A stretch of 64,000 bases of DNA from Geosiphon pyriformis uo1 (GCA_016748015.1 JAAOMT010000280.1:81046-145045), one strand, 5' to 3'. Shown: positions 2,142-50,408, counted from the first letter of the stretch. The notes: generated by a model not told the origin, from the letters alone. A program made the numbers and translations.

Positions 2142-2637
2142 ATGAAAACCTTTGTTTATACCTCCTTATTGGTCGTTTTTCTTGTTTGCAATATTTTGAC
2201 TGCAACACTGGTGAACGGTAAATATTGAAAAAGTTGAACTTTTATTTAATTACTATCTAATATAAAAAAATTTTTTCTATTCATTAATCAGGTCAAAGAT
2301 GCACAAGTAAGTTTTTCTCTTCTTCTTCTTCTTCTTCTTCTTCTTCTTCTTCTTCTTCTTCTTCTTCTTCTTCTTCTTCTTCTGTTTCTTCTTCAACCAC
2401 TAATACTTTAGGATAAATAAAATTTTATTAATAATGTTGAAATTTTGAATTTCTTTCCATTTATGACGGTAATTCGGATTTTTTTATATACAGCCAATAG
2501 TTGTGAACGTAAGTTTTTCACTGAATAAAATTTGTAAATTGACTTAATGATATTTCTTTTAAAACAATATTTATTTATTTATTTATTTTTTAATAGCTTG
2601 TCGAGTTTCTTGCGAAGGGGGCCAATGCACTTGTTAA
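2142..2637 (+). CDS. Secreted cysteine-rich peptide 1 (48 aa; 22-aa six-Cys defensin/toxin-like mature peptide), 4 exons
   Basis: Exons 2142-2217, 2292-2306, 2494-2508 and 2597-2637. Donors are GTAAAT/GTAAGT/GTAAGT, acceptors CAG/CAG/TAG, all phase 1. Spliced translation: MKTFVYTSLLVVFLVCNILTATLVNG-QRCTTNSCEPCRVSCEGGQCTC*. Confidence 0.85.
2320..2382. repeat. (TTC)n microsatellite in intron 2 of peptide gene 1
   Basis: About 20 uninterrupted TTC units. Confidence 0.95.
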
Positions 2638-3599
2638 GTATTCAAAGAGATACTCTGCTTTAAATCTTATCCTTTATACAAAAAATGTAAATATAGGATA
2701 TAAAAGTTTATAAAGCATTTAATAACCCATTTTTTGAGGTAAATACTCGAATGAAATATTACTTTATATATATTTATTAATTAGTTATTTATCTAGAAAT
2801 ATCATTTTAATTAAGTTCAAACTTTATTGTATTTCATAAAATTATTTATTATTAATAATTAAACAAATAGATTTCGAGATTATAAATTTAAAAAGTAAAA
2901 TCAATTATCACATTAGAAATAAAAAAATTTCAATTGTATTTTTGATTAGAAAAAAAAATATTAAGGGAATAAAAGTATAAAAGTAAGAAGACCATTAGTT
3001 AATACCAAAAAAATTTTACTCTGAAGATTAAAAAAAATTACTTCAACAGGAGGTATATCTCGTTTCTATTTTTGAAATAATAAAAGTTTCCAAGAAAATG
3101 TTACAAATTGATTTGAACTTCATATTTTCAATCGAATAAAATGATCCTTTTAAGATTAATCCAAGATAATATCAAAAGAATATTTATTGTTTTTAAACAT
3201 AACATAAAAAAGAATTTTCTATGGATTCTAGATTGACCCTTAACCTTAATTAAAGTCATAATTCAATATTACCCAATTGGATGACTTGATATAGATAATT
3301 TTGTTGTTATTAAATCTAGAAAAGTGAAATGAAAAATTTTCAAATCTTTATTTTTGGGTTATTTGGATGGAATCGTAGAAAAAATATTTGTATCAAACTC
3401 GCTACGTATGTTAAAGAATTTCAAATTTTTTTTTAAGTGTTTAAAGAATTTTGTTGAAATATGGTGCAAACCATTTATAATCATCAAAAATGTAGATCAG
3501 TCCGAAATTTTAAATGATAATTTTCACGTGTTTTTATTTATATAATTAAATTTTATTGGTTAATATACATGTGGTTTTAATATATTATTTATAATAAAA

Positions 3600-6500
3600 A
3601 ATAAAATTTTATTAAATTTTATATAGTATAAAACCAAATACAGTATTACAAAGTTTGAATATTATTTAATTTGTCTAATTCTTCAAGAATATTATCTGGA
3701 ATTTTTTTATGAAATTTATACTTTTTTATAGCATATTCTACTAATTTTCTATTAAAATCTTTTCTATAAAAATCTATATAACACCAACATTTTCTTGAAA
3801 ATCATCTAATAGTTATTAAAGATACTGATTCAAGACTTTTAAGCACTGTTTTTTGTAATTTTTTTCATGAATAATTGTATTTGTTATGTATATATCTTTT
3901 AGCAACTTCTCAATATCTTTTAATAAAATTTAATTCACAATAAAATTTTGGAAAAAAATGCACTTATGTTCCATACTTTTGAATAATTCTTCAATTGCAT
4001 TTTTTTGAACAAGAAAATTGGATTCCAAAGATATTACTTGACATGCACAACAAAAAACTTTTAAAGAAACTTTGATTTTTTTTTTGCATTTTTAGCATTC
4101 TAATACTAATTTTTTAATGACCATTTTTCTCATTCTATTAATATTTGTTTAATTTCTTTAGACAATCTTTAAAGTTTTTCATCTAAATATATTTCTGAGA
4201 AGATCATTGATTATAATTAATTATCTAATCTAAAAAAATATCTTGTATTAATAATTGCTTTTTACTTGGACTTAAATTTATCCTGTTTACAATTAAAGCA
4301 TTTTTACAAAATGTTGCATGATTAAAACTATTATTATAAACAAATATGGCTGTACAATTCAGATATAATTTCTCAAAAATTGGAATTGTTTTACATTTAA
4401 TTTGTTTAAGAAAATGGTCTGCTGTCTAATAACTATCTTGATTTATATCAAATTGCAAATAACATTGTGTTTTTTCTGGTATATTAAAATATTTTCTATA
4501 TCATTTTGTTGTAAACATAAATGTTTATTAATTTTAGTTAGAAATTCACTAATCATAATTAATCTTCTATTTCTTTTTTTTCTTAGCAGCAAATTTTTAT
4601 GCTTAGCTTATATGTCATACTTGCCATTATTTGAATAAAAAATGCATTTATTATGAATTACAAAAACTTTTTTTTCTTTTTATTAAGTAAGTTAGAATCT
4701 ATTTGATCCATAAATTTATTTTTATACTTTGATATATACTTTTTATGCTCATATATTTTTTCTAAATATTCTTTTTAAGATTACAAGACATTATTTTTTT
4801 ATGTCAATTATAATATAAGTCTTAATGATGTTGTTGAAATAAATAACCAAGAATTTAGAGTCATTTTATTACAATTATAAAACTAATAGTTTTTTTTTTT
4901 ATTATTATTCTAATATTAGGAAACAATTCATGCTCAATAAATTTTTTAAATGTAGCTAAAATAGCATTGAAGTTTTGGTTTCTAATCCAAATATGACATT
5001 TTTTTACAATGTTTTCATTATCAATTATTTTAATTGTTTTTTGATGTTTTCTATATTTTGATGTTGAAAATTTATTATTAAACAATTAATATTTTGCAAG
5101 ATATCAAATTTTTTGTGCTTTTTAGATACTACCATTAATAAAAACTTTCTGGGGAATTTTCAAACTGGCATTAATTTTTTCATCTCTATTATTATTATTT
5201 AACAAGATAAGATATTTAAAAATAGCTTTTTTTGATTATATTTGAAAACAGTTAACTGAATATGTTGTTTTTCTAAATGTTTTTTTAATTCTTGTCCTTT
5301 TTTTATTCGATTAACATACAAATTAACTTTACTTTCTGCATAGTTTGAAAATTTATTAGATTTGGGCCATTGTAAGTCTGTAGTTTAAGTATTACTAATA
5401 TTAAAAAAAGTAATAATTTTTTTAATTCCAGCTGCTGCTTTGGTAAATAAACTATTTGGTCTATATTTATTATAATAAATTGACTTTGGTATTTTTTTTG
5501 TTATATAAAAGTCTTGTTTCTTTTTTTCTAGATGATTGTTGTTTTTTTATACTAAACTAAGTTTTTTTAATTTTGTATTTATTTTAATTGCAGCTTTCAT
5601 ATCTTTTGTATCATTCCATTTGCTGTTATTATTGTTATCTCATTTTTTATTACTAATATCTAATTTATTAAATTTGTTTATTTTAATATCATAATTATTT
5701 ATTAATATAGTATGATATGTTTTTTATATAATCTTTTTGTATTTCTAATTTAATTTTTAGCTTTTTTTTTTTTAGAATAAAGTGGCATTTTTTTATGTAA
5801 TATAATATTAATCTAATATGTAATTGATGCTTGGACAAAATTAAAGGATTTAAATCATGTAATATTACACAACAAAATTATATTACAATAGAAATAGCAT
5901 TTTTAACTCAGATATATATTTATTTTTTAAATTTTTTTGGTTCTAATTTAAACTTTAATTTCTGTTTTGTAGTTCTAAATAAAAAATAATCAAAAAAAAC
6001 TCTTTTGGTATTCATCAAAAAAAATTTTTTATTGGGATCAAAAAGATTATCTGAGTCAAAAATTCAGGTGACATTAATAAAAATAGTTATCACAAAAATC
6101 TTTTTGATTTATAACAAAAAATTTGAACAAAAAAGTCTAATATTAACAATTATATAACTAATTTAAAAAAAACCCAATTTTTAAATTGAAGCTGATCTTT
6201 CAGAGCTGATAAAAGATTTATTGTAAATGATTGTTAATTAAAAAGATAGTAGATAAGAATATTTGAAATAAATTTTAATTTTAGTATTACAGTCTAGTTG
6301 TGATTTTTTATTTTCATATTTAATAGTTGATAATATACTGAATTATTTATGAATTTACTGTCCAAAGAAAAATATTCAGAATATTATGATGTAATCAAAG
6401 AGTTAAGATTCTTACATATGATTAAAGTTGGTATTATGCACTTTTTTCTCATCAGTTGCTTAATATTTAACATATGTTTTCTATATCACATTAGTAAAAA

Positions 6501-10699: not shown

Positions 10700-10930
10700 A
10701 TGATTCCTAAAAATTTCTCCTGGAAATTGACTTTTTTGATTCTTATTGGACTATCCATGATTTTTTCCACTGGAGATGGTTAGTTTTTTTTTTATCACAT
10801 CTTATTAATCTGCTAAATAAGTGCTTAAAACACACATTTTTAATTTATTTAATATCTACTCTTATTATTATTATTATTATTATTATTATTCTCAGGTGAT
10901 TACCTTTTTCAGCCAGTCAATTATTTATAA
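10700..10930 (+). pseudogene. Truncated or chimeric paralogue of peptide gene 3 (signal-peptide exon plus an unrelated short exon)
   Basis: Exon 1 10700-10778 reads MIPKNFSWKLTFLILIGLSMIFSTGD-G, nearly the same as gene 3. Intron 1 is homologous to the gene 3 intron up to a (TTA)n tract. The acceptor CAG at 10895 gives GDYLFQPVNYL* (37 aa, no Cys). Confidence 0.6.
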
Positions 10931-11735: not shown

Positions 11736-12072
11736 ATGCTTCCTAAAAATTTCTCTTGGAAATTAAGTTTTTTGATTCTTGTTGCGCTATCGATAATTCT
11801 TTCAACTGCTAATGGTTAATTTTTTATTATTATCTCATATCTTACCAATCTACTAATTAAGTGACTAAAAAACACTTATTTTTAATTTATCTAATATCTA
11901 CTCATTATTATTATTATTATTATTATTAAAACCGTAATTAGGAAGCCCATTAGAGTATAAATCCAAAAGATCATTTACACCCTGTTTCAAGGCATGCATT
12001 CAAGGCTATGTTTGTGCAAAGAATGGCAATTGTGTTCTTGAAAGTAAGTACTATTAAATAACATTAAAAGCA

Positions 12073-12113
<41 letters not shown>

Positions 12114-12308
12114 ATAGTAGCCTCTCTTACCAATAAAAACAAACTTTTAATTTAAAATTCTTCTATTCTGACCCCAGAAACCAAAGGCTACAACGAAAAA
12201 TGTGATGATGATAGTAACTCACAGCCAGTTTGTAATATGTTATGTATCATTGGCAAACACTGCGAAATCATTGACAACAAAGCAGAATGTGTGGATAACA
12301 CGGTATAA
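11736..12308 (+). CDS. Secreted cysteine-rich protein 3 (103 aa; signal peptide, KR-ending propeptide, two C-x3-C-x2-G-x2-C-x5/8-C-V repeats), 3 exons
   Basis: Exons 11736-11814, 11942-12043 and 12178-12308 with phase-1 GT-AG introns. Translation: MLPKNFSWKLSFLILVALSIILSTANG-SPLEYKSKR-SFTPCFKACIQGYVCAKNGNCVLEKTKGYNEKCDDDSNSQPVCNMLCIIGKHCEIIDNKAECVDNTV*. AATAAA follows downstream. Confidence 0.88.
12075..12109. repeat. (CT)n microsatellite in intron 2 of gene 3
   Basis: Perfect CT run. Confidence 0.9.

Positions 12309-13237: not shown

Positions 13238-13302
<65 letters not shown>
12778..13302. repeat. 95-bp minisatellite, 5 near-identical copies, running into a (TAT)n microsatellite
   Basis: The unit start TTATATTACATGG recurs at 12781, 12876, 12971, 13066 and 13161. 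(TAT)n spans ~13242-13302. Confidence 0.95.
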
Positions 13303-14844: not shown

Positions 14845-14885
<41 letters not shown>

Positions 14886-15132: not shown

Positions 15133-15518
15133 ATGACTAAATCTCTTACTTCCACTTGGACTAAATTCGTCATCTTGTGTCTCATTGTCTTGGCCATGTT
15201 TACAAATGTTGGGTTGAGTTGGGGAAGACGTATGTATTATAGTATTTTTTTTCTTTTTCTTTTTCTTTTCTTTTTAAAGTTTTTGAAGTTGATGAGTCAC
15301 CGAAAACTAATCTGAAAAAAATATTTACAATATTTTAATTTTAAATAGTTAACTGTGGATCACAAGTGATTGGGTGTTTTGAAGGCTGCAAAAGTGATGA
15401 GAAATGCTTTTATGCCCAGAATCAATACGGATGTTATTACGCGTTTTGTGCTAATCCTAATAATTTCGGTCCTGATTGTAGAGATAGTCAGGGAAACCAA
15501 GTCAAGCTATTACCTTAA
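15133..15518 (+). CDS. Secreted cysteine-rich peptide 4 (88 aa; six-Cys core plus one extra Cys), 2 exons
   Basis: Exons 15133-15229 and 15349-15518 (GTATGT...TAG, phase 1). Translation: MTKSLTSTWTKFVILCLIVLAMFTNVGLS-WGRLNCGSQVIGCFEGCKSDEKCFYAQNQYGCYYAFCANPNNFGPDCRDSQGNQVKLLP*. TATAAATA at ~14933. Paralogous to genes 5 and 6. Confidence 0.9.
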
Positions 15519-19899: not shown

Positions 19900-22800
19900 G
19901 TTGTCAAAATTCACTTATTTCCTCATTGTATGGGTGATTATTTATACTTGTTACAGCAATCAGAAAAACACTTTGCAGTACACAACAGAAATGATCTAGA
20001 GTTTATTGAACTCAATCTTCTGCCCTTTTGCTTGATCTGTTTTCCTGTTGAAAAACAATTCAATAGACAATTCCAAAACTTTTAGAACTGGTTTCTGAAC
20101 AAGTATTCAGCTGAAACCTACACAGCTTATACCATCTATTACTTTGATCAAGCTTATTTTGAAGACAATTTTGAAGAAAGAAATACCAGAATCAATCAGC
20201 TCTTATACTCCACAACTTTTGAACAACAGCCCTCTGATTTCGAATATCTGAATCACCAAATCCATATTTGGATTGCTGCTTACCAACTAGTTGAAAATCC
20301 CTTTGAAATAGAAGAAAAAAGTTACCAAACTGCCCTTATTTTTGATATTTTCTCAAATGAATCAGAGCACTCTACACAAACAGTAACTCCTGAACCAATG
20401 ACCCAAGATCCAATACAAGCAAACATCCTGGCCGCTCTCCAAGACATACAAACTGCTTTGAAACAAAGAAACAACACTCCACTATTATTATTCAGAGACA
20501 ATGCACAAGATCCAATTGAATGGTTGGATGACTTTGAAAAAGCTGCTACAGCCAACCAATATGATGATGAATACAAGTTTCAAATTGTTGGTAGCTATCT
20601 CCAAGGCTTTCCTGCTACCTGGTTCTCACAGGAAACTGATGCTAATGCTTATCAAAAAATCATTAGATGGATGCCAGCAAATGCCAGAGAAAACAACATC
20701 TCTTTTACAACCCAGTTTGAAAACAAGTTCAGAATTCCAATCTTGATATTCAAGTGGCACATGGAATTAGAAAAAAAAACTCAAGGCTCTGGTGAAATTG
20801 TAACTGAATATGCTAAAGCAATCAGAAAGTTAATTAAGTGTGTAGACTCTGAAAGAAATTGGACAGAAGAGCAAAAGATTCATTCTTTCACAAAAGGATT
20901 GAGAACCGATTTATCTTATGCTCTTTGGTCTCTTTTGGCCTTGAAAGACAATCCTACAATGGACATGGCCATTGAACTTGCCCAATGAATTAAAAACAAC
21001 CAAAGAATACATTTGGGATCTACACTTCCAGTTTTTGCTCCTGTTCCTGTCATGGCTTCTGCCTCTCAAATGGCTGCTGCCTCTTTTTCTGCCCAAACTC
21101 AAAATCCAAATAAACAATTAATTAATAGACTCACAGCCAATTTTGCCCAGTTATTAGAACCTTTGGCACAAGCAGTTAGAGATAACCAACAACCACAAAG
21201 ACCCAGATATGAATCATGTTTTAATCAGCCCTAACAACCTCCTTATCAAAGACAGCAAAATTATGGTCCTTCTGTATGTTATAGATGTGGATTAACTGGA
21301 CATTTCTCAAAAGATTGCAACAATCCTCTTTTACCTCCTTCAGTCCCCAGAAATAATGACAATCAAAACAATAGACTCATCAACAATAATGCTTCCAATC
21401 AAAGACCCAACCATGCCAACATCAATTTCTTTGGAGAGGATCTTCTAGTTGAAGCCACAGTCTATCAGTCTTTAAACTGGTAGGCATATTTCCAAAGGGT
21501 AAGAGTACAAGCCAACCAAAAGAACACCCCTTTTTCACTTTTAACTTAACTAATGATGACTATGACATAGATGAATTAGCAATTAACACTTCTGAATCAA
21601 CCAAAAAAAAGAAGAAAGCCAAGATTGATTTCGTTCTAGATCCCAACAAATCCTCAACTTCTACTGCTGATAACAATGAGCCACCAAAAGCCAAAGTTTT
21701 TAAGAACCCTCCAAAGTTAAAACCCCCAAAAATTGTACAAAAATCTGAATCCTATTCTGTTGTTAAAGATCTCATGAAAACCCTAGTACACATTACCTTT
21801 GGCCAGTTAATAACCCATCCACAGTTCAGAAAAGATCTCCACAAATCTTTAATTCCCAAAAAGAAAATACCAAAGACCAATAAATGTCCTCACTAAGCTG
21901 AACTTGCTGACAACAGCAATGTCACTCCTCTAATTTGCAAAGCACAAGTGGCTGGTTACTTTATTGACTTAATCCTAGACAGTGTTACCGGAGGTTTTTG
22001 GTCTCTTTTCTTAAATGTTGTTGATGCTTGTTTGCTGTTTTATTCACGACTAGAGGAAGTAGTTGAACCTTCGATAACTGAATTTATCTTCAAATTATCT
22101 CCTATAATTTGAACCGCTGGGCTTATAAGTGGAATGGCCAATTCCGTGCCAGTTACTTTATGTAGTTACGTTGTAGTAAACGTCAACTCTTTCCCAGGAA
22201 TTGCTCGTCTGGAAGCTCACTAAAAATGTGTAGTTACTTTGCTGTGAAAGTCAACTCTTCTACAGGAATCTCGTCTGTAGGCTACCCAAATGATTATGAT
22301 AAGAAAAGAAAGAGAAAAATAAAAGAAACGTAAAGAAATAGAATTTTATCAAGGAAAACGTTTTCTATCCAGGCCTGGAGTCACTAACAGATTACTGAAA
22401 TTGGTAGCTAATCAATTTCAAAATGTTAGTTGTGTTGAGGGAATTTCAAGTGTAATAATTTTAAGGATTTGGTTTTCGAATATTTTAATTTTTATTTGAT
22501 TTTGTAAAAGGTGATTTGTTCCAATTAAGATATTTGAAGTAAGTTACTATGATAAGATACTATGTTAAGATATGAGAAGATATATTTTCTTGAAGAGAGA
22601 AGCTCTTCTTTTATACAACTTGTTGTAATACTAGTCTTTGAACTTGCACTTTTTCTCTTTTCTAGAATTTCGGTGAACTAAAGATACATTTCGGCAAACT
22701 ACAAGTTATTTCACTGAACTATGAATTATTTCGGCCAATTTTCATTAATTTCGGCGAATTTTGGCTATGTTATATGGTTCAGAGTATTGTGTAAATTGAT

Positions 22801-25800
22801 CATCTCAATTTCTATGGTCCAAATCGGGTTATTGATTAAATGATGATAATTGCTAATTTGATTAAATAATAAGTGAAATTCGAAACAATAATAATATATG
22901 CTAATTAATGATAGGAATTATAAGAGAAATTTCATGCTAATTAATAGCTAAAATTCTACTGGTAACAACAGTGAATCATCTGTTAGTGTAATTGCCAAAC
23001 ACTTCCTTGAAGCAATTGGTAGAAAAATTGATGAGCCTTCCACCCGACCAATGACCAACGTACATGGTGACAAGAAGAAAAGTCTGGGCATTGCCAAAGT
23101 TATTCCTGTCTGCATCAATGACATCAGTATTGAAACTGACATGAAAGTTTCTGAAGCTAAAGAATACACTATCATTGTTGGCAATGAGTGGTTCAAGAAA
23201 GCAAAAGTCTTACTCGACTATGAATTTTGTGAGCTAACCATAAGATGTGGTGAAAAACCCATTGTGGTTAAATGTTGCCATTGGACAACTCCTCCAGCAA
23301 CCAAACAAAATCAAAAAGATGAACAATCAGAGGAATCAGATGATGAAGAGAGTGATGAAGAAGATGAACAAAAAGAACAAAAAAAAACTGCTGAACTCAT
23401 CTACACCACATTCACCAACAATGGCAAGCCATTAGACAATATTAAAGCTGATAGAGAGGAAATCATTGTAAATGGCAAGCTGATCTGCTGGTCTTACTAT
23501 GATATTCTAAGAAGAACCTTTGACCAAAAGCCTGGTAAGAAAGCCAAATACAGTTATTAGTGACATGGCCCTTGTGCTCAGTGCTGGTGCAATAAACTTT
23601 TGTATTTTCTAAGTAATAAATGCAAATTATGCCTGATTTATTACAAAGATTGGGAACCAATTAGCCTAATACCAAGAGATGAATTAAAAGAAGTACAGAA
23701 GTCCTTTGAGAATAAACCACCTGAGATTCAATTATTAGTAATAAAACAAAGAGAACCCTCCCCAGAAGAAAGAAAAATAGACATTGAAAATCTGTTGGCA
23801 AGAAACAGCTCAGTTATTTCCAAAGAAAGTGATACCCCAGGACAAACCCATGTGATACAACACACCATCACCACCAGAGAAACTTGCCCCATCCATTTGA
23901 AGCCTTACCAATCCAATTGTCAAAATAATGAGTTCATCAAGAAAAAAATAAACCAGATGAAAGAACTTGGATTCATACAAGAAACCAAGAATGAATGGGC
24001 TTTCCCAGTTGTAGTGATATCCAAGAAAGATGAAACTCTACACTTCTGTGTTAACTACTGCCAATTAAATGCCATTACTGAAAGAGACATATACCCACTT
24101 CCCAAGATTGATGCAATGCTGGACCAATTCAAAGATGCTGCTTTCTTTTCAACCATTGATCTAACTGCTGGATTCTGGCAAGTAGAGATGGATCCAGAAA
24201 GCCAGAAAAAAACCGCCTTCATTATCAAGTATGGCACCTATGAATTCACAGTCATGCTTTTTGGTCTTACCAATATCCCTTCCACCTATCAACACTTAAT
24301 AGATAAAGTATTTGAATCAGTAAAAAAAAACTTTGTTCTGGTCTATCTGGACAATATAATGGTGTACTCAAAAACCTGGGATGAACACCTTGAACATTTG
24401 CAAAAGGTTTTTGATCTTCTTAGAAATACAGGTCTTTCTTTGGAAGACAATCCACCCAATTCCTTGGCCATCTTATTACAAAAGATGGAATCTTCTCTGA
24501 TTCAGCCAAAGTGGAAAAAGTTCAGAACATAAAACAACCAATGAATGTTTATGAGTTACATTCTTTCTTTGGTTTGGCCTCCTATTATCACAAATTTGTT
24601 AAGGATTTCTCCAAAATTGCCTCTTCACTCAATCAGCTACTCAGGAAAAATATCAACTACCATTGGGGCACACATCAGCAGAAAGCATTTGAAACTCTTA
24701 AAGAAAAATTGGTTACAGAATCTATTCTCAAGCAACCTGATCTGGATCAACTTTTCATCCTTCACACTGATACATCTGGCTATGGACTTGGTGCTGTTTT
24801 CTCACAAAAAGATGAAGATAGCAGGGAACATGCAATAGTCTATACCAGTAGAACCCTTACACCAGCAGAAAAGAACTATTCAGTTACTGAGCAGAAATGC
24901 TTAGCAGTAGTTTGGGCTACCAGCTACTGGGATAAGTATCTTCTTGACATGAAGTTTTTGGTGATAACAGATTACCAAGCTTTGGTTTGGCTGCACAACA
25001 AAAAAAAGCTAGAACATAAATGGATAGTCTGCTGGATACTCCACTTGAATGAATTTGACTATAATATTCAACACCGTAAAGGAGCTAATCATCAAAATGC
25101 CGATGCTCTCTTCAGACTTACCACCAAGTGACAGTACAATCTCCCAAACCAAACCAACCTAATTATTAGTAATTCTCTTACAACCAAACATGATAATGGA
25201 CTTGGACAACTACTCTGCCTTAATAGAATTTTTGGGTAAAGGACAATACTCACCAAAATACACTCAACAGCAAAGAGAACATTTGCCCAAACAATCAAAT
25301 TTTTATTTGATCTGCCAGAACCAATTATACAAAAGAAATAGAAAAGATCTTGACTGTCCTCAGAGAGTCATAAGATTTGAAAAAAGAGAAATTGTGATCT
25401 ACAACATGCACACTGATCCATTAGCCAGACACTTTGAAAAAACAAAAACAATTCAGAAAACTCTAGCTCGCTATTATTGGTCTACCTTGGAAAAAAACAT
25501 TGCTAAGTACATCAAAACCTGTGATACCTGCCAAAAAAGAGGAAAACCCAATTACAAAGAAAACATTCATTCAATCTTTGTTGGCCAACTCTTTGACAGA
25601 ATTGGTATAGATGTTGTTGGACCATTAACAGTAACTCCTAATGGCAACAGATACATTATCACAGCTACTGACTATCTTATAAAGTGGGTAAAAGCAAGAG
25701 CCACCCCAGATCAAACAGCAGTTTCCATTGCTAATTTTATTTATGAAGATATCATTTATTGCCATGACTGCTTCAAAGAACTTTTATCTGATAGAAGAAG

Positions 25801-26440
25801 AGCTTTTCTCAGTACACTTGTTGAAGAACTTTGCAGAAAAATGGGAATATGTCACAAACTTTCCTCCCCTTATTACCCCCAAACAAATGGCCTAGTGAAA
25901 CGTTTCAATAGAACACTGTGTGAAACCTTAGCCAAAACAAGTAAAGAAACAAACTTATAAGACAAAGTACTGCCTTCAACTTTGTTTTCTTATAGAACTG
26001 TAAATCATAACATAACAAGTTATGAACCCTTTTTCCTGCTCTATGGACAAATGGCAACACTACTAATAGAAACTGATATTAAGACAATACTCTTTAAAGA
26101 AATCACAATAGAAAATTACAAAGACATTTTACAAAAAAGACTGGGTACCATTTTTGACTTCTTAGTAGAAGCATAAATAATTGCTTTTGAAAAGATAAAA
26201 CAGTTTTAAGAAAAGCTTAAGAAAAAAAAAACCTATAAAACACTTTCTTTAAACATTGGTGATGTCTATGATGATAAATTTTCTAGCTGATGGAAAGGAT
26301 CTTTTATAGTCAACAAAGTTCTGAACAATGGTTCTTATATTCTTCAAGATCAATCTGGAACAATCTTTAATAATTGTTCTGTTCATGGCACACGACTCAA
26401 AAAATATTACAAACGATCTGATTGGTTACCTGTTGTAATA
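19900..26440 (+). pseudogene. gag-pol of Gypsy A (fragmented)
   Basis: Gag capsid-like DPIEWLDDFEKAA, zinc knuckle CYRCGLTGHFSKDC (~21277), protease ILDS(E)SS, RT (YPLPKID, IDLTAGFWQV, YLDN), RNase H (LHTDTSGYGLGAV), integrase (CDTCQK, IGIDVVGP, YPQTNGLV). Many stops and frameshifts. Confidence 0.95.
21983..22967 (-). mobile_element. Solo LTR (985 bp) of a different family inserted in the Gypsy A protease
   Basis: TGTTACC...GGTAACA termini and 4-bp TSD ACAG. Non-coding, CpGs retained. A related fragment lies at 52592-52793 in the opposite orientation. The strand is tentative. Confidence 0.85.
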
Positions 26441-35629: not shown

Positions 35630-38600
35630 GAGTCGATATTACCACAACAGACAGCCAATTAGGTCGTTTATAATATTTCTTAAGTTGTATACCATGAACA
35701 GGACTATCATTAAAAATTGTTCTGGATTGATCTTGAAGAATATAAGAACCATTGTTCAAAACTTTGTTGACTATAAAAGGTCTTTTCTACTGGCTAGAGA
35801 ATTTATCACCATAGACATTGTCTCTGTCTGAACAGTATTCTAGTACCAAGTTACCAATACTTAAAAAAAGTGTTTTATAGGTTTTCTTTCTTTTAAGCTT
35901 TTCTTGGAACTGTTTTATCTTTTCAAAAGCAATTATTTATGTTTCTACTAAGAAGTCAAGAATAGTACTCAGTTTTTTTTGTAAAATGTCTTTGTAATTT
36001 TCTATTGTGATTTCTTCAAAGGGTATTGTTTTAATGTCAGTTTCTATTGGTAGTGTTGCCATGTGTTCATAGAGCAGATAAAAAAGTTCATAACTTGTTA
36101 TGTCATGATTCACAGTTCTATAAGCAAACAAAGCTGAAGGCAGTACTTTGTCCCATAAGTTTGTTTCTTTACTTGTTTTGGCTAGGGTTTCACATAATGT
36201 TCTATTAAAACATTCTACTAGATCATTTGTTTGGGGGTGGTAAGAAGAGGAAAGTTTGTGACATATTCCCATTTTCCTGCAAAGTTCTTCAACCAGTATA
36301 TTAAGAAAAGCTCTTTCTCTATCAGATAAAAGTTTTTTGGGGCAGCCATAATGGCAAATAATATCTTCATAAATGAAATTGGCTATTAAGACTGCTGTTT
36401 AGTCTAAGGTGGCTCTTGCTTCTACCACTTTGTAAAATAGTCAGTAGCTGTGATAATATATCTGTTGCCATCAGGAGTAATTGTTAAAGGTCTAACAACA
36501 TCTATACCAATTCTGTCAAATGATTGACCAATAGAGATTGGATGAATATCTTCTTTGTGATTGGGTTTGTCTTTTCTTTGACAGATGTCACAGGTTTTGA
36601 TGTATTCAGCAATGTTCTTTTCCAAGATAGACCAATAATAGTGAACTAAAATTTTTTGAATTGTCTTTGTTTTTCCAAAGTGTCTAGCTAATGGGTCAAT
36701 GTACATGTTGTATATTACAATTTCTTTTTTTTTAAATCTGATGACTCTTTGGGGGCAGTCAGGATTTTTTCTGTTTCTTTTATATAATTGGTTCTGGTGG
36801 ATCAAATAGAAATTTAATTGTTTGCACAAATGTTTTCTTTGCTGTCGAGTGTATTCTGGTGAGTATTGTCTTTTACCCAAAAATTCCATTAAGACAAAAT
36901 AGTTGTCCAAGTCTATTATTGTGTTTGTTTGTAAAGAAGTTACTAATAATTAAGTTGGTTTGGTTTGAAAGGTTGTACTATTATTGGATAATAAGTCTAG
37001 AAAAAGCATTGGCATTTTGATGATTTGCTTCTTTGTAGTATTGAATATCATAGTCAAATTTATCCAAGTAGAGTATCCAGCAAGTTATTTGTTTGTGTTT
37101 CAGCTTCTTTTTATTGTGCAGCCAAACCAAGACTTGATGATCTGTTACCACTAAAAATTTTACACCAAAAAAATCTTGATCCCAGTAGTTAGTAGCCCAA
37201 ACTACTGTTAAACATTCTTGTTCAATAACTGAATAGTTCTTTTTTGCTGGTGTAAGAGATCTACTGGCATATGCTATAGCATGTTCTCTGCCATTTTCAT
37301 CTTTCTGTGAAAAAACAGCATCAAGTCCATAGCCAGATGCATTAGTGTGGAGGATGAAAGATTGGTCCAGATCAAGTTGCTTAAGAATTGGTTCAGTAAC
37401 AAGTTTTTTCTTTAGAATTTTAAAAGCTTTTTGTTGATAAATGTCCCAGTAATAATTGACATTTTTTTTGAATAGCTGATTGAGAGAAAAGGCAATTTTG
37501 AAGAAATTTTTGATAAATTTGCAATAGTAAGAGGCCAAATCAAGGAAAGAGCATAGTTCAGGAACATTTATTGGTTGTCTAATGTTCTGAACTTTTTCAA
37601 CTTTAGCTGAGTCAGGAAAGATTCCATCTTTTGAATTAAGATGACCAAAGAACTGGGTGGATTGGCATCCAAAGAAAGATTTGATTGGGTTGATCTTAAG
37701 GCCAGCATTTTTGAGCAGATCAAAAACTTTCTGTAAATGTTTAAGGTATTCATCTCAGGTTTTTGAATATACCATTATATTGTCCAAATAAACCAGAACA
37801 AAGTTTTCTTTTACTAATTCAAACACTTTATTCATTAGGCATTGAAAGATGGGAGAAGCATTGGTGAGACCAAAAGACATAACTGTGAATTCATAAGTGC
37901 CATACTTGGTGATAAAGACAGTTTTCTTTTTGCTTTCTGAATCCATCTCTACTTGCCAGAATCTAGCAGTTAAGTCAATGGTTAAGAAGAAAGCAGCACC
38001 ATTGAATTTATCTAGCATTGTATCAATTTTGGGGAGTGAGTACATGTCTCTTATAGTGATGGCATTTAGTTGGCAATAGTCAACACAGAAGCATAAAGTT
38101 CTATCTTTCTTGGATATTACTACAACTGGAAAAGTCTATTCATTCTTGGTTTTTTGTATGAATTTAAGATCTTTCATCCAGTTTATTTCTTTCTTGATAA
38201 ACTCATCATTGCATTGATTGGATTGATAAGGCTTCAAATAGATGGAACAAGTTTCTTTTGTGGTGATGGTATGTTGTATTACATGAATTTGTCTAGAGGT
38301 GTCATCTTCTTTTGAAATAACTGGGCTATTTCTAGCCAACAAATTTTCAATGTCTATTTTTCTTTTTTCAAAAGAAGGTTCTCTTTGTTTTATAACTAGT
38401 AATTAGATTTTAGATGGTTTATTTTCAAAAGACTTTTGTACTTCTTTAAGTTTTTTTCGAGATATCAAGCTAATTGGTTTCCAATCTTTGTAATAGATCA
38501 GGCAGGATTTGCATTCATTACTTGGTAAATACAAAGATTTATTACACTAGCACTGTACACAAAAACCATGCCACTAATAACTGTATTTGGCTTTCTTGCC

Positions 38601-41230
38601 AGGTTTTTTGTCAAAGATTCTTTTGAGGATATTATAGTAGGGCCAGCAGATTAGCTTGCCATTTACTATGATTCCTTTTTTGTCAGCTTTAACATTGTTC
38701 AGTGGCTTGCCATTACTGATAAAGATGATATAAATAAGTTCAGCAGTTTTTTCTGGTTCTTCTTGATCTTTATCATCACTTTCATTATCATCTGATTCAT
38801 CTGATTGTTCTTCTTTTGGTTCTGTTTGGTTGCTAAAGGAGTTGTTCAATAATGGCATTTAACCACAATGGGTTTTTTACCATATCTGATGATTAGCTCA
38901 CACAGTTTATAGTCAAGTAATGCTTTGGCTTTCTTAAGTCACTCATTATTAACAATAATGATATACTCTTTTGCTTCAAATACTTCCATATCTGTTTCAA
39001 TGCTAATACCATTGATGCGAACAGGAACAGCTTTGGCTATATCCAAATCTTTCTTTTTGTTATCATGTACATTGGTCATAGACTAAGTAGAAGATTCATC
39101 AATTTTTTTTTCAATGGCTTCTAGAAAGTGTTTGGCAATTACACCAACAGATGATCTACTGTTTAGGATTAAATCAATAAAGTAGCCAGCCACTTGGGCT
39201 TTACAAATCAGAAGAGTGACATTGCTGTTGTCAGTAAATTTAGCTTGATGAGAGTGTTTGTTGGTTTTTGGTGTCTTTTTTTTTGGTATTAAGGATTTGC
39301 AAAGTTTTTTTCTGAATTGTGGATGGGTTATTAGTTGGCCAAATATAATATGTATTGGAGTTTCTATGAGATCTTTAACAACAAAATAGAGTCCAGATTT
39401 TTGTACAATTTCTGAGGGTTCTAATTTTGGAAAATTTTTAAAAACTTTAGCCTTTGGTGGCTCATTGTTGTCAACAACAGAAGTTAAGACTTTATTGGGA
39501 TTTAGAACGAAATCAACCTTGGCTTTTTTTTTCTTTCTTGTTAAGTTAGAGGTGTTGATTGCCAGTTTATCCATATTATGATTATTAGCAGTTAAGTTAA
39601 AAGCATAAAATGGGTTTTTTTCTGATTGGCTTGCACTTTCACTCTTTAGAAGTGCTACTAATTTAAAGGCTAATAAACAGTGGCTTCAACTAGGGGATCT
39701 TCTCCAAAAAAATTAATGTTGGCATGATTGGATCTTTAATTGGAAATATTATTACTGTTGGGTCTGTTATTCTGAGTGTTATTATTTTTAGGAGCTGGAG
39801 GAGGCAATAGAAGATTGTTGCAGTCTCTTGAGAAGTGTTTAGTTAGTCTATGATGATAGCACACAGGTAGACCATAATTTTACTGTCTTTGATATGGTGG
39901 TTGTTGAGACTAATTGAAACAGAGTTCAAATCTGGATCTTTGGATTTGTTGATTCTTTCTAACTGCTTAGGCCAAAGGTTCTAACAGCCAGGCAAGATTT
40001 GTTGTAAGCCTATCTATTAATTGTTTATTTGAATCTTAAGTTTGGGCAGCAAAAGAGGTAGCAGCCATTTGTGAAGCAAGAGCCATAATAGGTGCAGGAG
40101 CAAAAACCAGAAAGGTGGATCCCAGATGCATTCTTTAGTTATCTTCTATTCTCTGAGCAAGTTCAATAGTCATATCCATTGTGGAATTATTTTTTAAGGC
40201 CAGGAGAGGCTAAAGAGGATATGATAGATCAGTTTTTAGTTTTTTTGTAAAGGAATGTATTTTCTGCTTTTCTGTCCAATTTTTTCCAGAGTCTACCCAT
40301 TTAATAAGTTTTCTTATTGCTTTGGCATATTCTGTCACAACCTCATCAGAGCCTTGAGTTCTTTTTTCTAATTCCATATGCCATTTGGATATTAAGATAG
40401 GAGTTCTGAATTTCATTTCAAACTGAATAGTGAAAGAAGTATTGTCTTCTCCAGCATTTGTTGATATCCATCTAATGATTTTTTGTTAAGCATTGGCATT
40501 GGTTTTTTGTAAGAACCAAGTAGCGGAAGAGCCTTAAAGATAGCCACCAACAATTTGGAACTTGTATTCATTATTATATTGGTTGGCTGTGACTGCTTTT
40601 TCAAAGTCATCTAATTATTTGATTGGATCTTGTGTATCACCTCTGAATAATAGTAGTGAGATATTGTTTTTTGTCCTAAAGCAGTCTGTATATCTTGGAA
40701 GACAATCAGAATGTTTTGTTGCAAAAGGTCTTGAGCTATTGGTTAAGGGGTAACTGTTTGTGTGGATGAGTTTGATTTGCTTAATAAAAGGTCAAAAACA
40801 GAAGCAGTTTGGTAGCTTTCTTCTTTTGTTTCAAAAGAAGTTTTAGTTGCTTGATGGACAGTAATTCAAATGTGGATTTGATGATTCAAATATTCGAAAT
40901 CAGGGGGCTGTTGTTCAAAGGTTGTAGAATATAAGAGCTGATTAATACTGTTGTTTCTTTCTTCAAAGTTGTCTTCAAAATAAGCTTGGTCAAAGTAATA
41001 AATTGTATAAGCTGTGTAGATTTTAGCTAAATGCTTGTTCAAGAACCAGTTCTAAAAGTCTTGGAATTGTCTGCTGAATTGTTTTTTAATGGAGAAGCAA
41101 ATTAAGCAGGAGGGCAAAGGATTGAGTTTAATAAAGTCTAAATCGTTTTTGTTGTGTGCTTCAAAGTGTTCTTCTGATTGTTATGGCAGGTATCAATAAT
41201 TACCCATATAATAGGAAACAAAGTGGAATT
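35630..41230 (-). pseudogene. gag-pol of Gypsy B (fragmented)
   Basis: Gag, PR (LILNSRSS from ILDSGSS), RT (YSLPKID, YLDN), RNase H (HTNASGYGL) and IN (CDICQR, IGIDVV, YHPQTN) fragments in the ORF track. Confidence 0.95.
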
Positions 41231-47323: not shown

Positions 47324-47792
47324 ATGAAGCCATTTTTATTTGCAATACTTTTTCACTCGGCTTTCATTTCCGTGATCCTAGTATTAATAATACCCTTACA
47401 ATTAGTGAATGGATATGCCAATATTGGTAGATCATGTAAGAAAGCCGAAAATTATCTTGTTTTGATGAATTAATTTTCTCTTGACACGTTTAAAGAAATA
47501 TTATCCCTGTTTCTTTTTCTCAATCATCTAGTAAGGTGTCCAAATACAGAAATAGGATGTTTCGATGGATGTCCCGTAGATCAAGAATGTGAATATTATA
47601 CCGAAGAATCGAATGGATGTTATAAAGCTCGGTGTAGTGCAAAAGATAAAAATAATACCCATTCAGGTTTGTATCATTTATCTGAACCCATTTTTTGAAT
47701 GAAAATTTCTCAACTTATTTCTTAATATATATATATTTTTTTTTTTGGATATTATTTTAAAAGGTAAAAAAGACAAGCCAAAACGACCTTAA
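47324..47792 (+). CDS. Secreted cysteine-rich peptide 5 (91 aa; six-Cys core, basic tail), 3 exons
   Basis: Exons 47324-47435, 47532-47666 and 47764-47792, phase 1. Translation: MKPFLFAILFHSAFISVILVLIIPLQLVNG-YANIGRSLRCPNTEIGCFDGCPVDQECEYYTEESNGCYKARCSAKDKNNTHSGKKDKPKRP*. The last exon is less certain. Confidence 0.87.
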
Positions 47793-49696
47793 AAAAAGGC
47801 CCAGGAACGTACTTTTTTTATTTTTAGCGTTTAAAAAACTTTTTACATACGCTTTATTCTCAAATTCATGATTCTTGGCTGGCTAGCTGACCCAAATTCG
47901 ATGGAAATAATTTTACCAAGGTTTTGGATTATAATTTCAAAAGAAACATGTACTTTAAAAATTTACAATCCCTAGTAATTTCAATTTTTTCTCTTATACA
48001 ACATTTGTCAAAATAAATTTGAACTTTGAAACTTATTGGTACATTTTTATATGAAGTAGATAATTTTTAATTCTTAATTAATCGGTATTTTTATTATTTA
48101 ATATTATTGTAATTTCTTTTTAGGATTTCCTTTAATTAATATTAATATAAATTTAAAATTGTTACTGCTAAATTAAAAGTTTATAATCTTTTTGGTTGTT
48201 CAATAAATAAATAAATAAATTGTTAAAATTTTTTTTGGATTATTAGCAAATAACTATTTAAGAAAATTGTAGAAACTCATAAAAATAATATTTTGATATT
48301 TTATTTCTTTCAATAATAAAATTACATAAAAAAACCATATAATTAAGATTAATTTAGTTTAATCAATATTTTGCTAAAAGTATTATTTTTTTAAGCTAAT
48401 ATTCAACATGTTTAAAAGTAATTTATGATATTTTGAATTTTTAAGATTAAATGATTTTTTTATTTTCTTAAATTTATGGCTTTTTTTAAATGGTTTGAAA
48501 TTCTTGAAATTTTACAAATGGATATTTTTATTAAATTATTTTATAGTTAAAATAATTTTCAAATAAACATAAAATAACTATTATTAAAACAGACACAAAC
48601 AAAGAAACCAAATAATTCAAAATAAATAAAACAAACAAAACTAATCAAACTTTTTATTTTTGTAATAGGTATTAATTTGCTTAAAAAACCAAAGCCAGAT
48701 TTAATCAGTTTTTTTTTATATATCCAAATATCTCAAAAAAGTTCAAAAAACTCCATAATGTTTTTTATATTTGTGACAAATATGATTTATTTTTTTTAAT
48801 AATTTTTTTAATTATTTAAAATGTTAAATAATGTATTAATAAATAATATTTAAAACTTTAAAAATTAAATTTTTAAGAGTTTAATTTTATTTAATGTTTG
48901 CTTTAAAGAAATTTTAAAGTTGTTTTTTGGATAATTTATACTATTTAACTCCAAATATTAATCTTTTATATAAGCATATTAATTTTTGATGTTTTTTTTT
49001 TCATTTCAACATTAATTTTTATCATATTTTTTATGCTTAATTACATATATTTACCTAATTAAAAATATCTTAAAAAGTTAAATTTAATATCATAAAAATT
49101 TTTTTAATTGTAAAATAAACAAAAAAAGGATATTTTGTTTAAAGAAGAGCAAAATTTACAATATTTAAAAGAAACCAATCATCTGAAATGAAACTGCACT
49201 TAATTATTCACCAATAATTTCTTGTTTTAAATGCGGATGGAAACACTTTATGTTTTTCATTTAAAATCTTTCATAATTCGAAACTAAAAATAATGAAGGT
49301 TGTTCTATTTCATAACCAAAAACAGCTGTTTTAATCAATTTTGAGTTTTTTTTTAATGTTTCAAAATCAGTTTGAACTTGGTATTTAATCTTTTCTTAGA
49401 GGATTTCTTTTTACCTTCTCAAAGAGAAAAAATCTGGATTCAAAAATTGAAAGAGTTAATCGATAACTTGCTTGCAACTAGAAAATGTGTGACATCATAT
49501 TACGTTCATTAGTTATCATTAATGGAGGTGCATTTGGCAATAAACGAAAACAAATTACAAAGAACAATGTCAAAAGCTGATCCTTTTTATCATCATTGAC
49601 GAGTTTATCAAACAACTTAATTCAGTGCCGATTGCCTTTATTAGTCACTGCAATAGGAATTTTAAAAAAGAAAATGCTGTGTGGGCTTATTTTGTG

Positions 49697-49803
49697 GCTT
49701 CTACTTGGTTAGAATTTGTGAAAAACTTGTTTGAATGGGCCCAGTGTAAAGCTTTTACTTGGTTAGCATTGGTGAAAAACTTGTTTGAATGAGTCAGTGT
49801 AAA
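49697..49803. repeat. 54-bp tandem duplication upstream of gene 6
   Basis: GCTT(C/T)TACTTGGTTAG..GTGAAAAACTTGTTTGAATG..CAGTGTAAA occurs twice. Confidence 0.9.
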
Positions 49804-49908
49804 ATCATTTAAGTGGGCAGCTGAAAACTTTTGGTGAGCAGAGAATTTCTAATTGTGCCGAATTTCTTAAAAATCTTCAATAGCTAATATTTTTAAAATC
49901 TTTTTGAA

Positions 49909-50408
49909 ATGCAAATGCAAATGCAAATGAAAATTGAATTCCATATTCTCATATTAATCATTCTAGCTTTGACCATGGTTACACATTTTATAAATGCTTT
50001 ACCATCTCCTAATAATCATTTAGGTTGTTATTTTTAAATTTTGAAGTTTATTCTCAAATCCTACCGTTTTCTAACTTCTCGTTGAATCATTATCTTTATT
50101 CCTCCAGCATGTCCAAATATTGAATTAAGTTGTTTTAACAAATGTCCAAAGGAACAGTGTTACTTTTATACAGAAAGCTCAGCTCCTTGTCTCAAAAGTC
50201 GATGTAAAAATAAAGATTTTAATGAAGGTATGAATTTCGAATCAATCGAGAGTCTCATTATCAAACCATTTTGTCGTTTTAATCTGGTGAATTACTTAAA
50301 TAATCAATATGGAAATTGAATATACTCTTTTTTCCTTTCTACCGATATTGGGAAAATATAGATAACAATAAAAAGTCAAATTTTAAAGAACTGCAACGAC
50401 CAAAATGA
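49909..50408 (+). CDS. Secreted cysteine-rich peptide 6 (87-93 aa; six-Cys core, basic tail), 3 exons
   Basis: Exons 49909 (or 49927)-50023, 50108-50227 and 50362-50408, phase 1. Translation: (MQMQMQ)MKIEFHILILIILALTMVTHFINA-LPSPNNHLACPNIELSCFNKCPKEQCYFYTESSAPCLKSRCKNKDFNEDNNKKSNFKELQRPK*. Intron positions match gene 5. Confidence 0.85.

What the first reader, a model, noticed from the sequence alone, without database searches (positions are those of the whole stretch)
2142..50408. Hidden co-oriented cluster of six spliced genes for small secreted peptides (five Cys-rich, three different scaffolds)
Seen: the only intact host genes in 64 kb are tiny multi-exon genes on the + strand. Each has a hydrophobic signal-peptide exon followed by a phase-1 intron, and five have a Cys-rich payload. 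The ORF track misses them. Established: a signal exon plus a phase-1 intron is a common architecture in defensin and venom-peptide genes, and effector clusters often sit in TE-rich compartments. Inference: this is a peptide arsenal locus (antimicrobial, symbiosis effector or protease inhibitor). If the organism is Geosiphon or another glomeromycete, the peptides are candidates for control of endosymbiotic bacteria (Nostoc or Mollicutes-related endobacteria), by analogy with legume NCR peptides. That function is speculative.
Basis: partly seen in the sequence, partly recalled or inferred. Interest (0 to 1): 0.9.

Follow-up and report, generated by a model that had tools for sequence, protein, structure and literature searches.

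The report
Small secreted cysteine-rich gene cluster, Geosiphon
A transposon-rich stretch of the fungus Geosiphon pyriformis carries five plausible small genes for secreted cysteine-rich proteins plus one truncated duplicate; three of them are soluble versions of a known fungal domain (Opy2), and nothing here shows what any of them do.

Summary
The six + strand ORF chains exist as described. Each has a hydrophobic first exon, and all introns are GT-AG and phase 1.

- g5 (47324-47792) is already in GenBank as hypothetical protein KAG9299896.1, identical to my model, so it is not hidden.
- g4, g5 and g6, plus a fourth copy on another contig, are old paralogues in which only the Cys-rich exon stays alignable. 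Profile comparison places that exon as a divergent six-Cys form of the Opy2 cysteine-rich domain (PF09463). The proteins are short and lack a membrane anchor.
- g3 is an orphan nine-Cys protein with a weak likeness to CREMP/FOLN-type modules.
- g2 is a truncated 5' duplicate of g3 with no Cys-rich part.
- g1 is a singleton. Its two 15-nt microexons form a statistically non-random structure, but splicing is unverified.

No RNA run was listed, so splicing and expression remain untested. I found no support for an antimicrobial or NCR-like role: there is no defensin signature and the net charge is near neutral.

The scan's first readers have noted many similar hidden secreted-peptide genes elsewhere in this genome, including an Opy2-like one. 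Verdict: a real but fairly ordinary cluster of lineage-specific small secreted protein genes, of unknown function.

The parts
2142..2637 (+). g1: a 4-exon model (2142-2217, 2292-2306, 2494-2508, 2597-2637). It gives a 48-aa precursor with a 22-aa six-Cys C-terminal part, spaced C-x4-C-x2-C-x3-C-x4-C-x-C. Exons 2 and 3 are 15-nt microexons.
   Evidence: Sequence and model. CDS GC is 0.40 against 0.21 in the introns. The only two AG-N15-GTAAGT sites in the window are these microexons, and both share the donor context GTAAGTTTTTC. Genome-wide the motif occurs 13 times against 4 for the control. g1 is a singleton at the DNA level. Splicing is unverified.
2120..2131 (+). TTATTAATTCAA box, ending 10 nt before the g1 ATG. 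The same box sits at 10678-10689 (g2) and 11714-11725 (g3).
   Evidence: Searches found 7 box-N10-ATG sites in the genome against 6 for the control. Three are these sites; the other four have no signal-like ORF. g1 and g3 show no wider similarity.
10700..10930 (+). g2: a truncated 5' duplicate of g3. Exon 1 is 10700-10778 and intron 1 ends at 10895. The reading frame stops after 10 more residues, with no Cys-rich payload.
   Evidence: Alignment to g3. Alignment z is 18 for exon 1 and 14 for intron 1. No Cys-rich in-phase exon lies downstream.
11736..12308 (+). g3: a 3-exon model (11736-11814, 11942-12043, 12178-12308) giving 103 aa with 9 Cys after the signal-like part. A KR dibasic site lies shortly after the signal. 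Exons 2 and 3 each carry a module of the form C-x3-C-x5-C-x5/8-C.
   Evidence: No paralogue in the genome. No Pfam hit. Exon 3 matches the four modules of PDB 9pgb_A (CREMP) with whole-sequence E 0.0014. The Atlas leads (TILa, FOLN, EB) score only 0.77-0.82.
15133..15518 (+). g4: a 2-exon model (15133-15229, 15349-15518) giving 88 aa. It carries an Opy2-like six-Cys domain plus a seventh Cys in the tail.
   Evidence: It was not among the hits in the 1.84-billion-protein library, so it is probably unannotated.
47324..47792 (+). g5: a 3-exon gene (47324-47435, 47532-47666, 47764-47792) giving 91 aa. It has an Opy2-like six-Cys domain and a basic tail. It equals GenBank KAG9299896.1 (G9A89_005425).
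   Evidence: The model and P0001 are identical.
49909..50408 (+). g6: a 3-exon model (49909-50023, 50108-50227, 50362-50408) giving 93 aa. It has an Opy2-like six-Cys domain and a basic tail. The intron-1 donor is weak (GTTGTT). There are four possible ATGs (49909-49927).
   Evidence: Its exon 2 aligns to that of g5 with z 5.9. It was not among the hits.
20398..25960 (+). Decayed Ty3/gypsy retrotransposon (gag, RT, RNase H, integrase in separate broken ORFs), lying between g4 and g5.
35937..39574 (-). Second decayed Ty3/gypsy copy (RNase H and integrase fragments), lying between g4 and g5.
58620..63491 (-). Third LTR-retrotransposon remnant (gag/Ty3 capsid and a dUTPase-bearing pol fragment), downstream of the cluster.

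Best explanation
This is a TE-invaded cluster of lineage-specific genes for small secreted cysteine-rich proteins in Geosiphon pyriformis.

**How each product is made.** Each gene encodes an N-terminal signal peptide on its own exon. Phase-1 introns follow, and then one to three small exons encode a disulfide-rich part. That part would fold in the ER and be exported.

**The genes.**
- g4, g5 and g6, with a fourth copy on contig C637, arose by old duplications, tandem for the three in this window. They are soluble single-domain derivatives of the Opy2 cysteine-rich (CR) domain. They have lost the first and sixth of its eight cysteines, and they lack the transmembrane and cytoplasmic parts.
- g3 is an orphan with two four-Cys modules, one per exon, and probably a Kex2-type KR cleavage site.
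- g2 is a dead 5' duplicate of g3, or at most an alternative first exon for it.
- g1 probably yields a 22-residue six-Cys peptide using two 15-nt microexons.

**Likely mode of action (inferred).** The products are probably extracellular protein-binding or effector-type molecules. For g4-g6 this rests on the yeast Opy2 CR domain, which binds the HMH domains of the mucins Hkr1 and Msb2.

**Shown versus inferred.**
- Shown: gene structures, paralogy, exon-limited conservation, Opy2 homology, and one public annotation.
- Inferred: splicing of g1, g3, g4 and g6; secretion; processing; function.
For: **Organism and annotation**
- g5 is identical to GenBank KAG9299896.1 of G. pyriformis.
- The C637 paralogue is KAG9300492.1. 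It has the same exon plan: a signal exon, a phase-1 intron and a domain exon.

**Conservation**
- All six Cys and one Phe are invariant in the four copies.
- Between copies only exon 2 aligns (z 5.9). Introns, flanks and signal exons are at background. The duplicates are therefore old and the domain is constrained.

**Opy2 link**
- The family profile hits the metagenome protein P0005 at E 9e-5 in 1.84 billion proteins.
- P0005 is a three-repeat Opy2 protein (Pfam E 1.3e-10).
- hhalign of the family against Opy2 domains gives probability 95.5%, E 1.4e-8.
- Against only canonical eight-Cys Geosiphon domains it gives 89.7%, E 1.9e-6.
- The g3 exons used as Cys-rich controls give 0.4-2%.
- A shape search lists an Opy2 cluster at TM 0.52.

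**Opy2 CR function**
- The CR domain binds the Hkr1/Msb2 HMH domains (PMC13233613).

**g1**
- The microexon motif is statistically non-random.

**Composition**
- CDS GC is 0.34-0.40 against intron GC of 0.18-0.25 for g1, g3, g4 and g5.

**Signal-like N-termini**
- All have hydrophobic cores.
Against: - No RNA run was listed, so no junction or expression is verified.
- No formal signal-peptide predictor was available.
- g1 and g3 are singletons with no comparative support.
- g6 has a weak intron-1 donor, and its CDS GC equals its intron GC.
- g4 and g3 have odd Cys counts.
- The family does not reach the Pfam Opy2 cut-off (best 10.4-15.5 bits against 22.1).
- Foldseek against PDB found nothing.
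- The AF2 model has only moderate confidence (pLDDT 73).
Confidence: 0.68

Rival explanations
1. One reading: the locus is an antimicrobial or symbiont-control arsenal. On this view the peptides act like legume NCR peptides or defensins on Nostoc or on Mollicutes-related endobacteria.
For: - The products are small and Cys-rich, with signal-like leaders.
- The organism does house Nostoc (PMC9453076 and related papers).
- g5 and g6 are mildly cationic because of basic tails (+1.8 and +3.8).
Against: - No defensin, knottin or inhibitor family was hit by Pfam, the PDB sequence search or Foldseek.
- g1, g3 and g4 are near neutral (-0.3 to -0.5).
- The main scaffold is homologous to a protein-binding signalling domain, Opy2 CR.
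- No expression data tie the locus to the symbiotic bladder.
Confidence: 0.1
2. Only the Opy2-like family is functional. g1, g2 and g3 would then be decayed or chance ORF chains in AT-rich, TE-rich DNA that gene finders rightly skip.
For: - g2 is clearly a truncated duplicate.
- g1 and g3 have no paralogue or homologue anywhere I could search.
- No RNA evidence exists.
Against: - g1: the two microexon motifs are among 13 in 128 Mb, lie 202 nt apart, are in frame and each carries a Cys codon. Its exons are GC-richer than its introns.
- g3: it has intact frames, 9 Cys, consensus GTAAGT and CAG sites, one Cys module per exon, and a marginal CREMP match.
Confidence: 0.17
3. A specific functional reading: g4-g6 are soluble decoys or ligands that bind HMH domains of Msb2/Hkr1-type signalling mucins, either the fungus's own or those of other fungi, and so tune MAPK signalling.
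For: - The family is homologous to the Opy2 CR domain.
- The CR domain is the HMH-binding part of Opy2 (PMC13233613).
- The genome holds many further secreted multi-Opy2-domain ORFs besides one canonical membrane-anchored Opy2.
Against: - The idea is pure inference from domain homology.
- Two of the eight cysteines are lost.
- No mucin partner was looked for or shown.
- I could not test binding with any justified pair.
Confidence: 0.12

Closest known systems
Opy2 cysteine-rich (CR) domain, Pfam PF09463 (yeast Opy2, membrane anchor of the HOG pathway)
   Same: g4, g5 and g6 align over positions 4-35 of the 35-position domain. The spacing C-x6-C-x3-C-x5-C-x9-C-x4-C is shared, as is the 'CP..QEC' core. 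The same six-Cys variant occurs inside bona fide Opy2 repeat arrays: L039 and P0005.
   Different: - They fall below the Pfam cut-off.
- They have six cysteines, not eight.
- They have a signal peptide and then only 10-25 residues after the domain, with no transmembrane helix or cytoplasmic tail.
- The canonical Geosiphon Opy2 lies elsewhere, on C669.
Small secreted proteins / candidate effectors of arbuscular mycorrhizal fungi in TE-rich compartments (own knowledge; context in PMC11952901 and PMC13443276)
   Same: They are short, lineage-specific and Cys-rich, with signal-like leaders. They are clustered, duplicated and embedded among retrotransposons.
   Different: No expression or host-translocation data exist. 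Geosiphon's partner is a cyanobacterium, not a plant.
Legume NCR peptides and defensins
   Same: Small size, 4-6 or more Cys, and a signal peptide on a separate exon (own knowledge for NCRs).
   Different: They share no sequence, Pfam or fold match. The charge is mostly neutral. This is an analogy only.
CREMP (cysteine-rich eggshell membrane protein, PDB 9pgb) and FOLN/TILa-type four-Cys modules
   Same: g3 exon 3 aligns to each of the four CREMP modules, following C-x3/4-C-x2-G-x2-C-x8-C-V. The top Atlas lead carries TILa/FOLN.
   Different: The match is marginal: whole-sequence E 0.0014, and each module on its own is not significant. There is no Pfam hit. g3 has only two modules. The two g3 modules are not significantly alike by BLAST.
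Micro-exon genes of schistosomes (own knowledge)
   Same: g1 would be a secreted product built from symmetric (phase 1-1) microexons.
   Different: g1 has only two microexons, is a single gene in a fungus, has no family and is unverified by RNA.

Membership tests
Opy2 CR domain (PF09463), for g4/g5/g6 | Pfam HMM score at or above the gathering cut-off (22.1 bits) | tested here: not met
   g5 exon 2 scores 10.4 bits (E 0.87). The C637 paralogue scores 15.5 bits (E 0.022). g4 and g6 give no hit. None of them is listed in the genome-wide PF09463 scan.
Opy2 CR domain (PF09463), for g4/g5/g6 | Homology to bona fide Opy2 domains by profile comparison | tested here: met
   hhalign gives probability 95.5%, E 1.4e-8. 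Against ten canonical eight-Cys domains only, it gives 89.7%, E 1.9e-6. Cys-rich controls give 0.4-2%. There is also a transitive link through P0005.
Opy2 CR domain (PF09463), for g4/g5/g6 | Eight conserved cysteines | tested here: not met
   There are six Cys. The first and sixth cysteine positions of the eight are absent. The same variant exists in the repeats of L039 and P0005.
Opy2 protein (membrane anchor orthologue) | CR domain followed by a transmembrane helix and a long cytoplasmic tail | tested here: not met
   The models end 10-25 residues after the domain. The orthologue with a TM helix and tail is at C669:1236256-1236357.
Small secreted cysteine-rich proteins (SSPs) of AM fungi | Cleavable N-terminal signal peptide | tested here: inconclusive
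   The N-termini have hydrophobic cores (Kyte-Doolittle 12-mer score 2.6-3.4) and small residues near a plausible cleavage site. No SignalP or experiment was available.
Small secreted cysteine-rich proteins (SSPs) of AM fungi | Short length (under 300 aa), Cys-rich, no further membrane segment | tested here: met
   Lengths are 48-103 aa, with 6-9 Cys after the leader.
Small secreted cysteine-rich proteins (SSPs) of AM fungi | Transcribed and spliced as modelled | not testable with these tools
   No RNA run was listed. No transcript contig is on record.
Defensin / NCR-like antimicrobial peptides | Defensin-type sequence or fold signature | tested here: not met
   There are no Pfam hits. Foldseek against PDB gave nothing below E 2. 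The PDB sequence search with the profile was blank.
Defensin / NCR-like antimicrobial peptides | Antimicrobial activity, usually with a strongly cationic peptide | tested here: inconclusive
   The computed charge at pH 7 is -0.3, -0.5, -0.3, +1.8 and +3.8 for g1, g3, g4, g5 and g6. Activity itself is not testable here.
FOLN/CREMP-type Cys modules, for g3 | Significant sequence match to the family | tested here: inconclusive
   The match to PDB 9pgb_A has E 0.0014 summed over four modules, each weak alone. There is no Pfam FOLN, TILa or EB hit. Atlas scores are 0.77-0.82.

The most novel reading that the evidence does not exclude
Geosiphon has turned the ectodomain of a MAPK-pathway membrane anchor (Opy2) into a family of free, secreted six-Cys mini-proteins that act as diffusible ligands or decoys in partner or self recognition. 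Next to them sits a true fungal micro-exon gene (g1) that assembles a 22-residue six-Cys peptide from two 15-nt exons. On this reading the locus would be a symbiosis-related signalling-peptide cluster.
Probability: 0.1. Interest if true: 0.65.

Novelty: new member of a known kind. Interest (0 to 1): 0.3.

Why it matters
If these genes are expressed, they add to the secretome of the only known fungus with an intracellular cyanobacterium. At least two of them (g4 and g6) appear to be missing from the public annotation.

They also show that the Opy2 CR domain, known as part of a membrane anchor, exists as free secreted mini-proteins. That gives a concrete, testable hypothesis: binding to mucin HMH domains.

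Small secreted Cys-rich proteins in TE-rich regions are nevertheless a familiar feature of AM-fungal genomes, and no function is shown here. The finding mainly improves annotation and supplies candidates; it does not open a new class.

Tried and rejected
**RNA evidence**
- The look-up of sequencing runs on 10650-15560 listed no run.
- Exact look-ups of P0001 and P0003 in assemblies found no record.

**Structure**
- The AF2 model of the g5 domain has pLDDT 73.
- Foldseek against PDB gave no match below E 2.
- The Atlas shape search gave only TM about 0.5 rows, one of them Opy2.

**Wider relatives**
- The metagenome scan with the family profile found no confirmed relative.
- The hmmsearch gave two tick repeat proteins, which I take as spurious matches to a short Cys motif.

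**Ideas rejected**
- A common origin of the three scaffolds is rejected. g3 exons against the g4-6 profile give probability 0.1-2.8%, and g3 exon 2 against exon 3 gives no BLAST alignment.
- A 'reusable secretion cassette' shared by g1 and g2/g3 is not supported beyond a 15-nt identity. Upstream, exon 1 and intron 1 give z of 1.3 or less. Genome-wide the box-N10-ATG count equals the control.
- An alternative Cys-rich payload for g2 was not found.
- Other + strand GTAAGT sites and other Cys-rich frames in the window did not look like genes.
- The 40 kb upstream of the window on the contig holds no further such genes.

Exons were searched one by one, by reference.
- Joined models were translated only inside local scripts, to read frames, count Cys and check identity with P0001.
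- As a result the full-length public-annotation status of g1 and g3 was not determined.
- The search for homologous proteins was not used. Its length window would exclude the full-length proteins when queried with single exons.
- The g1 exons are too short for any protein search by reference.


Full report
**Setting.** The window is very AT-rich (GC 0.12-0.40). It is the last 64 kb of a 145-kb contig in a 128.3-Mb, 792-contig genome. A protein found later names the organism: Geosiphon pyriformis. That agrees with the published 129 Mb, 64% repeats and 29% GC (PMC9453076). All ORFs of 100 aa or more belong to three decayed Ty3/gypsy-type elements at about 20.4-26 kb (+), 35.9-39.6 kb (-) and 58.6-63.5 kb (-). 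A 540-bp dispersed repeat with at least 40 copies lies at about 3460-4000.

**Locating the six genes.** The finding gave no coordinates for the individual genes. I scanned for ATG-led hydrophobic N-termini and read the sequence. This recovered six + strand chains starting at 2142, 10700, 11736, 15133, 47324 and 49909. I call them g1 to g6. A script fixed the exon borders and translated the models locally. All 11 introns are GT..AG and phase 1. Donors are mostly GTAAGT, GTAAAT or GTATGT, but g6 intron 1 has a weak GTTGTT. After the leader the products carry 6 (g1), 0 (g2), 9 (g3), 7 (g4), 6 (g5) and 6 (g6) cysteines.

**g4, g5 and g6 are real paralogues.**
- Six-frame searches of the whole genome with the Cys-rich exons found only four members: the three here and one on contig C637.
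- The C637 copy has the same plan: a signal exon, a phase-1 intron, a domain exon and another phase-1 intron.
- Six Cys and one Phe are invariant across the four copies.
- A profile of the four exons was run by HMMER against 1.84 billion representative proteins and returned only five hits.
- Hit P0001 is identical to my g5 model. It is GenBank KAG9299896.1, hypothetical protein G9A89_005425 of G. pyriformis.
- Hit P0003 is the C637 copy, KAG9300492.1.
- g5 is therefore already annotated, with exactly the splice sites read here.
- g4 and g6 are 27-37% identical to g5 and to each other over their full length. They would form their own representatives in the library but did not appear. They are probably missing from public protein sets.
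- At the DNA level only exon 2 aligns between copies (z 5.9). Signal exons, introns and flanks are at background. The duplications are old and the domain exon has been kept.

**What the g4-g6 domain is.**
- Pfam gave only sub-threshold Opy2 (PF09463) hits.
- The fifth HMMER hit, P0005, comes from a JGI metagenome contig. It carries three repeats of the same six-Cys pattern and is a significant Opy2 protein (E 1.3e-10).
- The Geosiphon genome has at least 19 PF09463 matches above the cut-off.
- One of these is a canonical Opy2 with a CR domain, a TM helix and a long tail. Several others are secreted-looking multi-domain ORFs.
- hhalign of my family against these domains gives probability 95.5%, E 1.4e-8.
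- Against ten canonical eight-Cys domains only, it gives 89.7%, E 1.9e-6.
- The Cys-rich exons of g3, used as controls, give 0.4-2%.
- The alignment shows that the family lacks the first and sixth cysteines of the Opy2 pattern. This variant is also present in one repeat of a bona fide array (L039) and in P0005.
- An AF2 model (pLDDT 73, a beta-hairpin) found nothing in PDB. The Atlas shape search listed an Opy2 cluster at TM 0.52, which is weak.
- In yeast the CR domain of Opy2 binds the HMH domains of the mucins Hkr1 and Msb2 (PMC13233613).
- I therefore read g4-g6 as free, secreted, single-domain derivatives of the Opy2 CR domain. They are homologous to the domain family but are not Opy2 orthologues, and they fall below the Pfam threshold.

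**g3 and g2.**
- g3 has no paralogue and no Pfam hit.
- Its exon 3 matches each of the four modules of a cysteine-rich eggshell membrane protein (PDB 9pgb_A). The summed E is 0.0014, but no single module is significant.
- The best Atlas lead carries TILa/FOLN, at a score of only 0.82. Exon 2 gave nothing useful.
- By eye both exons carry a C-x3-C-x2-G-x2-C-x5/8-C-V module, but BLAST sees no similarity between them.
- A KR pair shortly after the leader suggests Kex2 processing. This is an inference.
- g2 shares with g3 a block running from 22 nt before the ATG through exon 1 and the whole of intron 1 (z 18 and 14).
- After that block g2 diverges and stops after 10 residues. No in-phase Cys-rich exon follows within 900 nt.
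- g2 is a truncated duplicate. It could at most serve as an alternative first exon spliced to g3 exon 2, which would be in phase. This is untested.

**g1.**
- g1 is a singleton. Its model needs two 15-nt microexons.
- GTAAGT occurs 23 times on both strands of the window, and two of these lie inside g1.
- AG-N15-GTAAGT occurs only twice in the window. Both occurrences are the g1 microexons, and they share an 11-nt donor context.
- The fuller motif CAG-N8-TGY-N4-GTAAGT occurs 13 times in 128 Mb (control 4). Two of the 13 are these sites, 202 nt apart on one strand.
- Both microexons are in frame, stop-free and carry one Cys codon each. CDS GC is 0.40 against 0.21 in the introns.
- The structure is therefore not chance. 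Whether both microexons are spliced in is unverified. Every combination of them stays in frame.

**The shared box.** TTATTAATTCAA-N10-ATG precedes g1, g2 and g3. Genome-wide it is no more frequent than its control (7 against 6), and the other four sites lack signal-like ORFs. g2 and g3 share it by duplication. g1 and g3 share nothing else that is significant. A third copy 9 kb away is unlikely by chance, so it may be a local regulatory element. A 'cassette' is not supported.

**Function.**
- No RNA run was listed, so expression and splicing are untested.
- Mature parts are near neutral (g1, g3, g4) or mildly basic through their tails (g5, g6).
- No defensin, toxin or inhibitor family was hit.
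- The antimicrobial or NCR-like idea remains an analogy without support.
- Literature searches found no description of secreted Opy2-domain mini-proteins in the held library. That is not proof of novelty.

**Context from the scan.** First readers have left many notes on hidden secreted Cys-rich peptide genes elsewhere in this genome, among them an 'Opy2-like peptide with paired cysteine loss'. Two notes lie on this same stretch, one on the g1 microexons and one on the box. I tested the two local notes and confirmed the Opy2 reading for my own locus.

**Limits.**
- Spliced models were searched exon by exon, by reference. The joined proteins were never sent to a search tool.
- The public-annotation status of g1 and g3 is therefore unknown, and their homologues in other Glomeromycotina could not be sought.

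**Verdict.** The cluster consists of five plausible genes plus one relic. One gene is already annotated, and one scaffold belongs to a known domain superfamily. The 'arsenal' function is unsupported.

Noticed in passing
window 801-1350: A GC-richer patch (up to 0.39 against about 0.2 around it) that is unique in the genome. It holds short ORFs on both strands, including an 80-aa ORF with 6 Cys in one 35-residue stretch at 968-1210 on the - strand. There is no Pfam hit. It may be an unrecognised exon or a decayed gene.
   Followed up: partly
window ~3460-4000: A roughly 540-bp dispersed repeat with at least 40 copies at 86-93% identity on many contigs. It is probably a non-autonomous element.
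   Followed up: no
window 49690-49810: Two tandem copies of a roughly 60-bp unit about 100 nt upstream of the g6 start codons. Their role is unknown.
   Followed up: no
G000:C669:1236256-1236357 (-); also C549 ~389.8k and ~434-436k, C597 ~180.5k and ~190.5k, C643 ~175k, ~185k, ~242k: Geosiphon has one canonical Opy2 (CR domain, TM helix and long tail). It also has several clusters of ORFs with a signal-like leader and 2-5 tandem Opy2 CR domains. At least 19 domain matches exceed the Pfam cut-off. This looks like an expansion of secreted Opy2-domain proteins.
   Followed up: partly
G000:C661:586781, C673:232591, C496:31627, C596:898031: Four of the 13 genome-wide CAG-N8-TGY-N4-GTAAGT sites resemble each other. 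They may be a conserved 15-nt microexon of another gene family.
   Followed up: no
L028 (JGI metagenome contig, 5514 bp), gene at 3067-3576: The only non-Geosiphon relative of the six-Cys family. It is an unspliced 169-aa protein with an N-terminal hydrophobic segment and three six-Cys Opy2 repeats, next to rotamase and Myb genes. The source organism is unknown.
   Followed up: partly
G000:C564:51046-71045 (L044, L041), upstream of the window: Ordinary genes resume about 26-30 kb upstream of the window, with P-type ATPase-like ORFs. They are separated from the window by another Ty3-type element.
   Followed up: no
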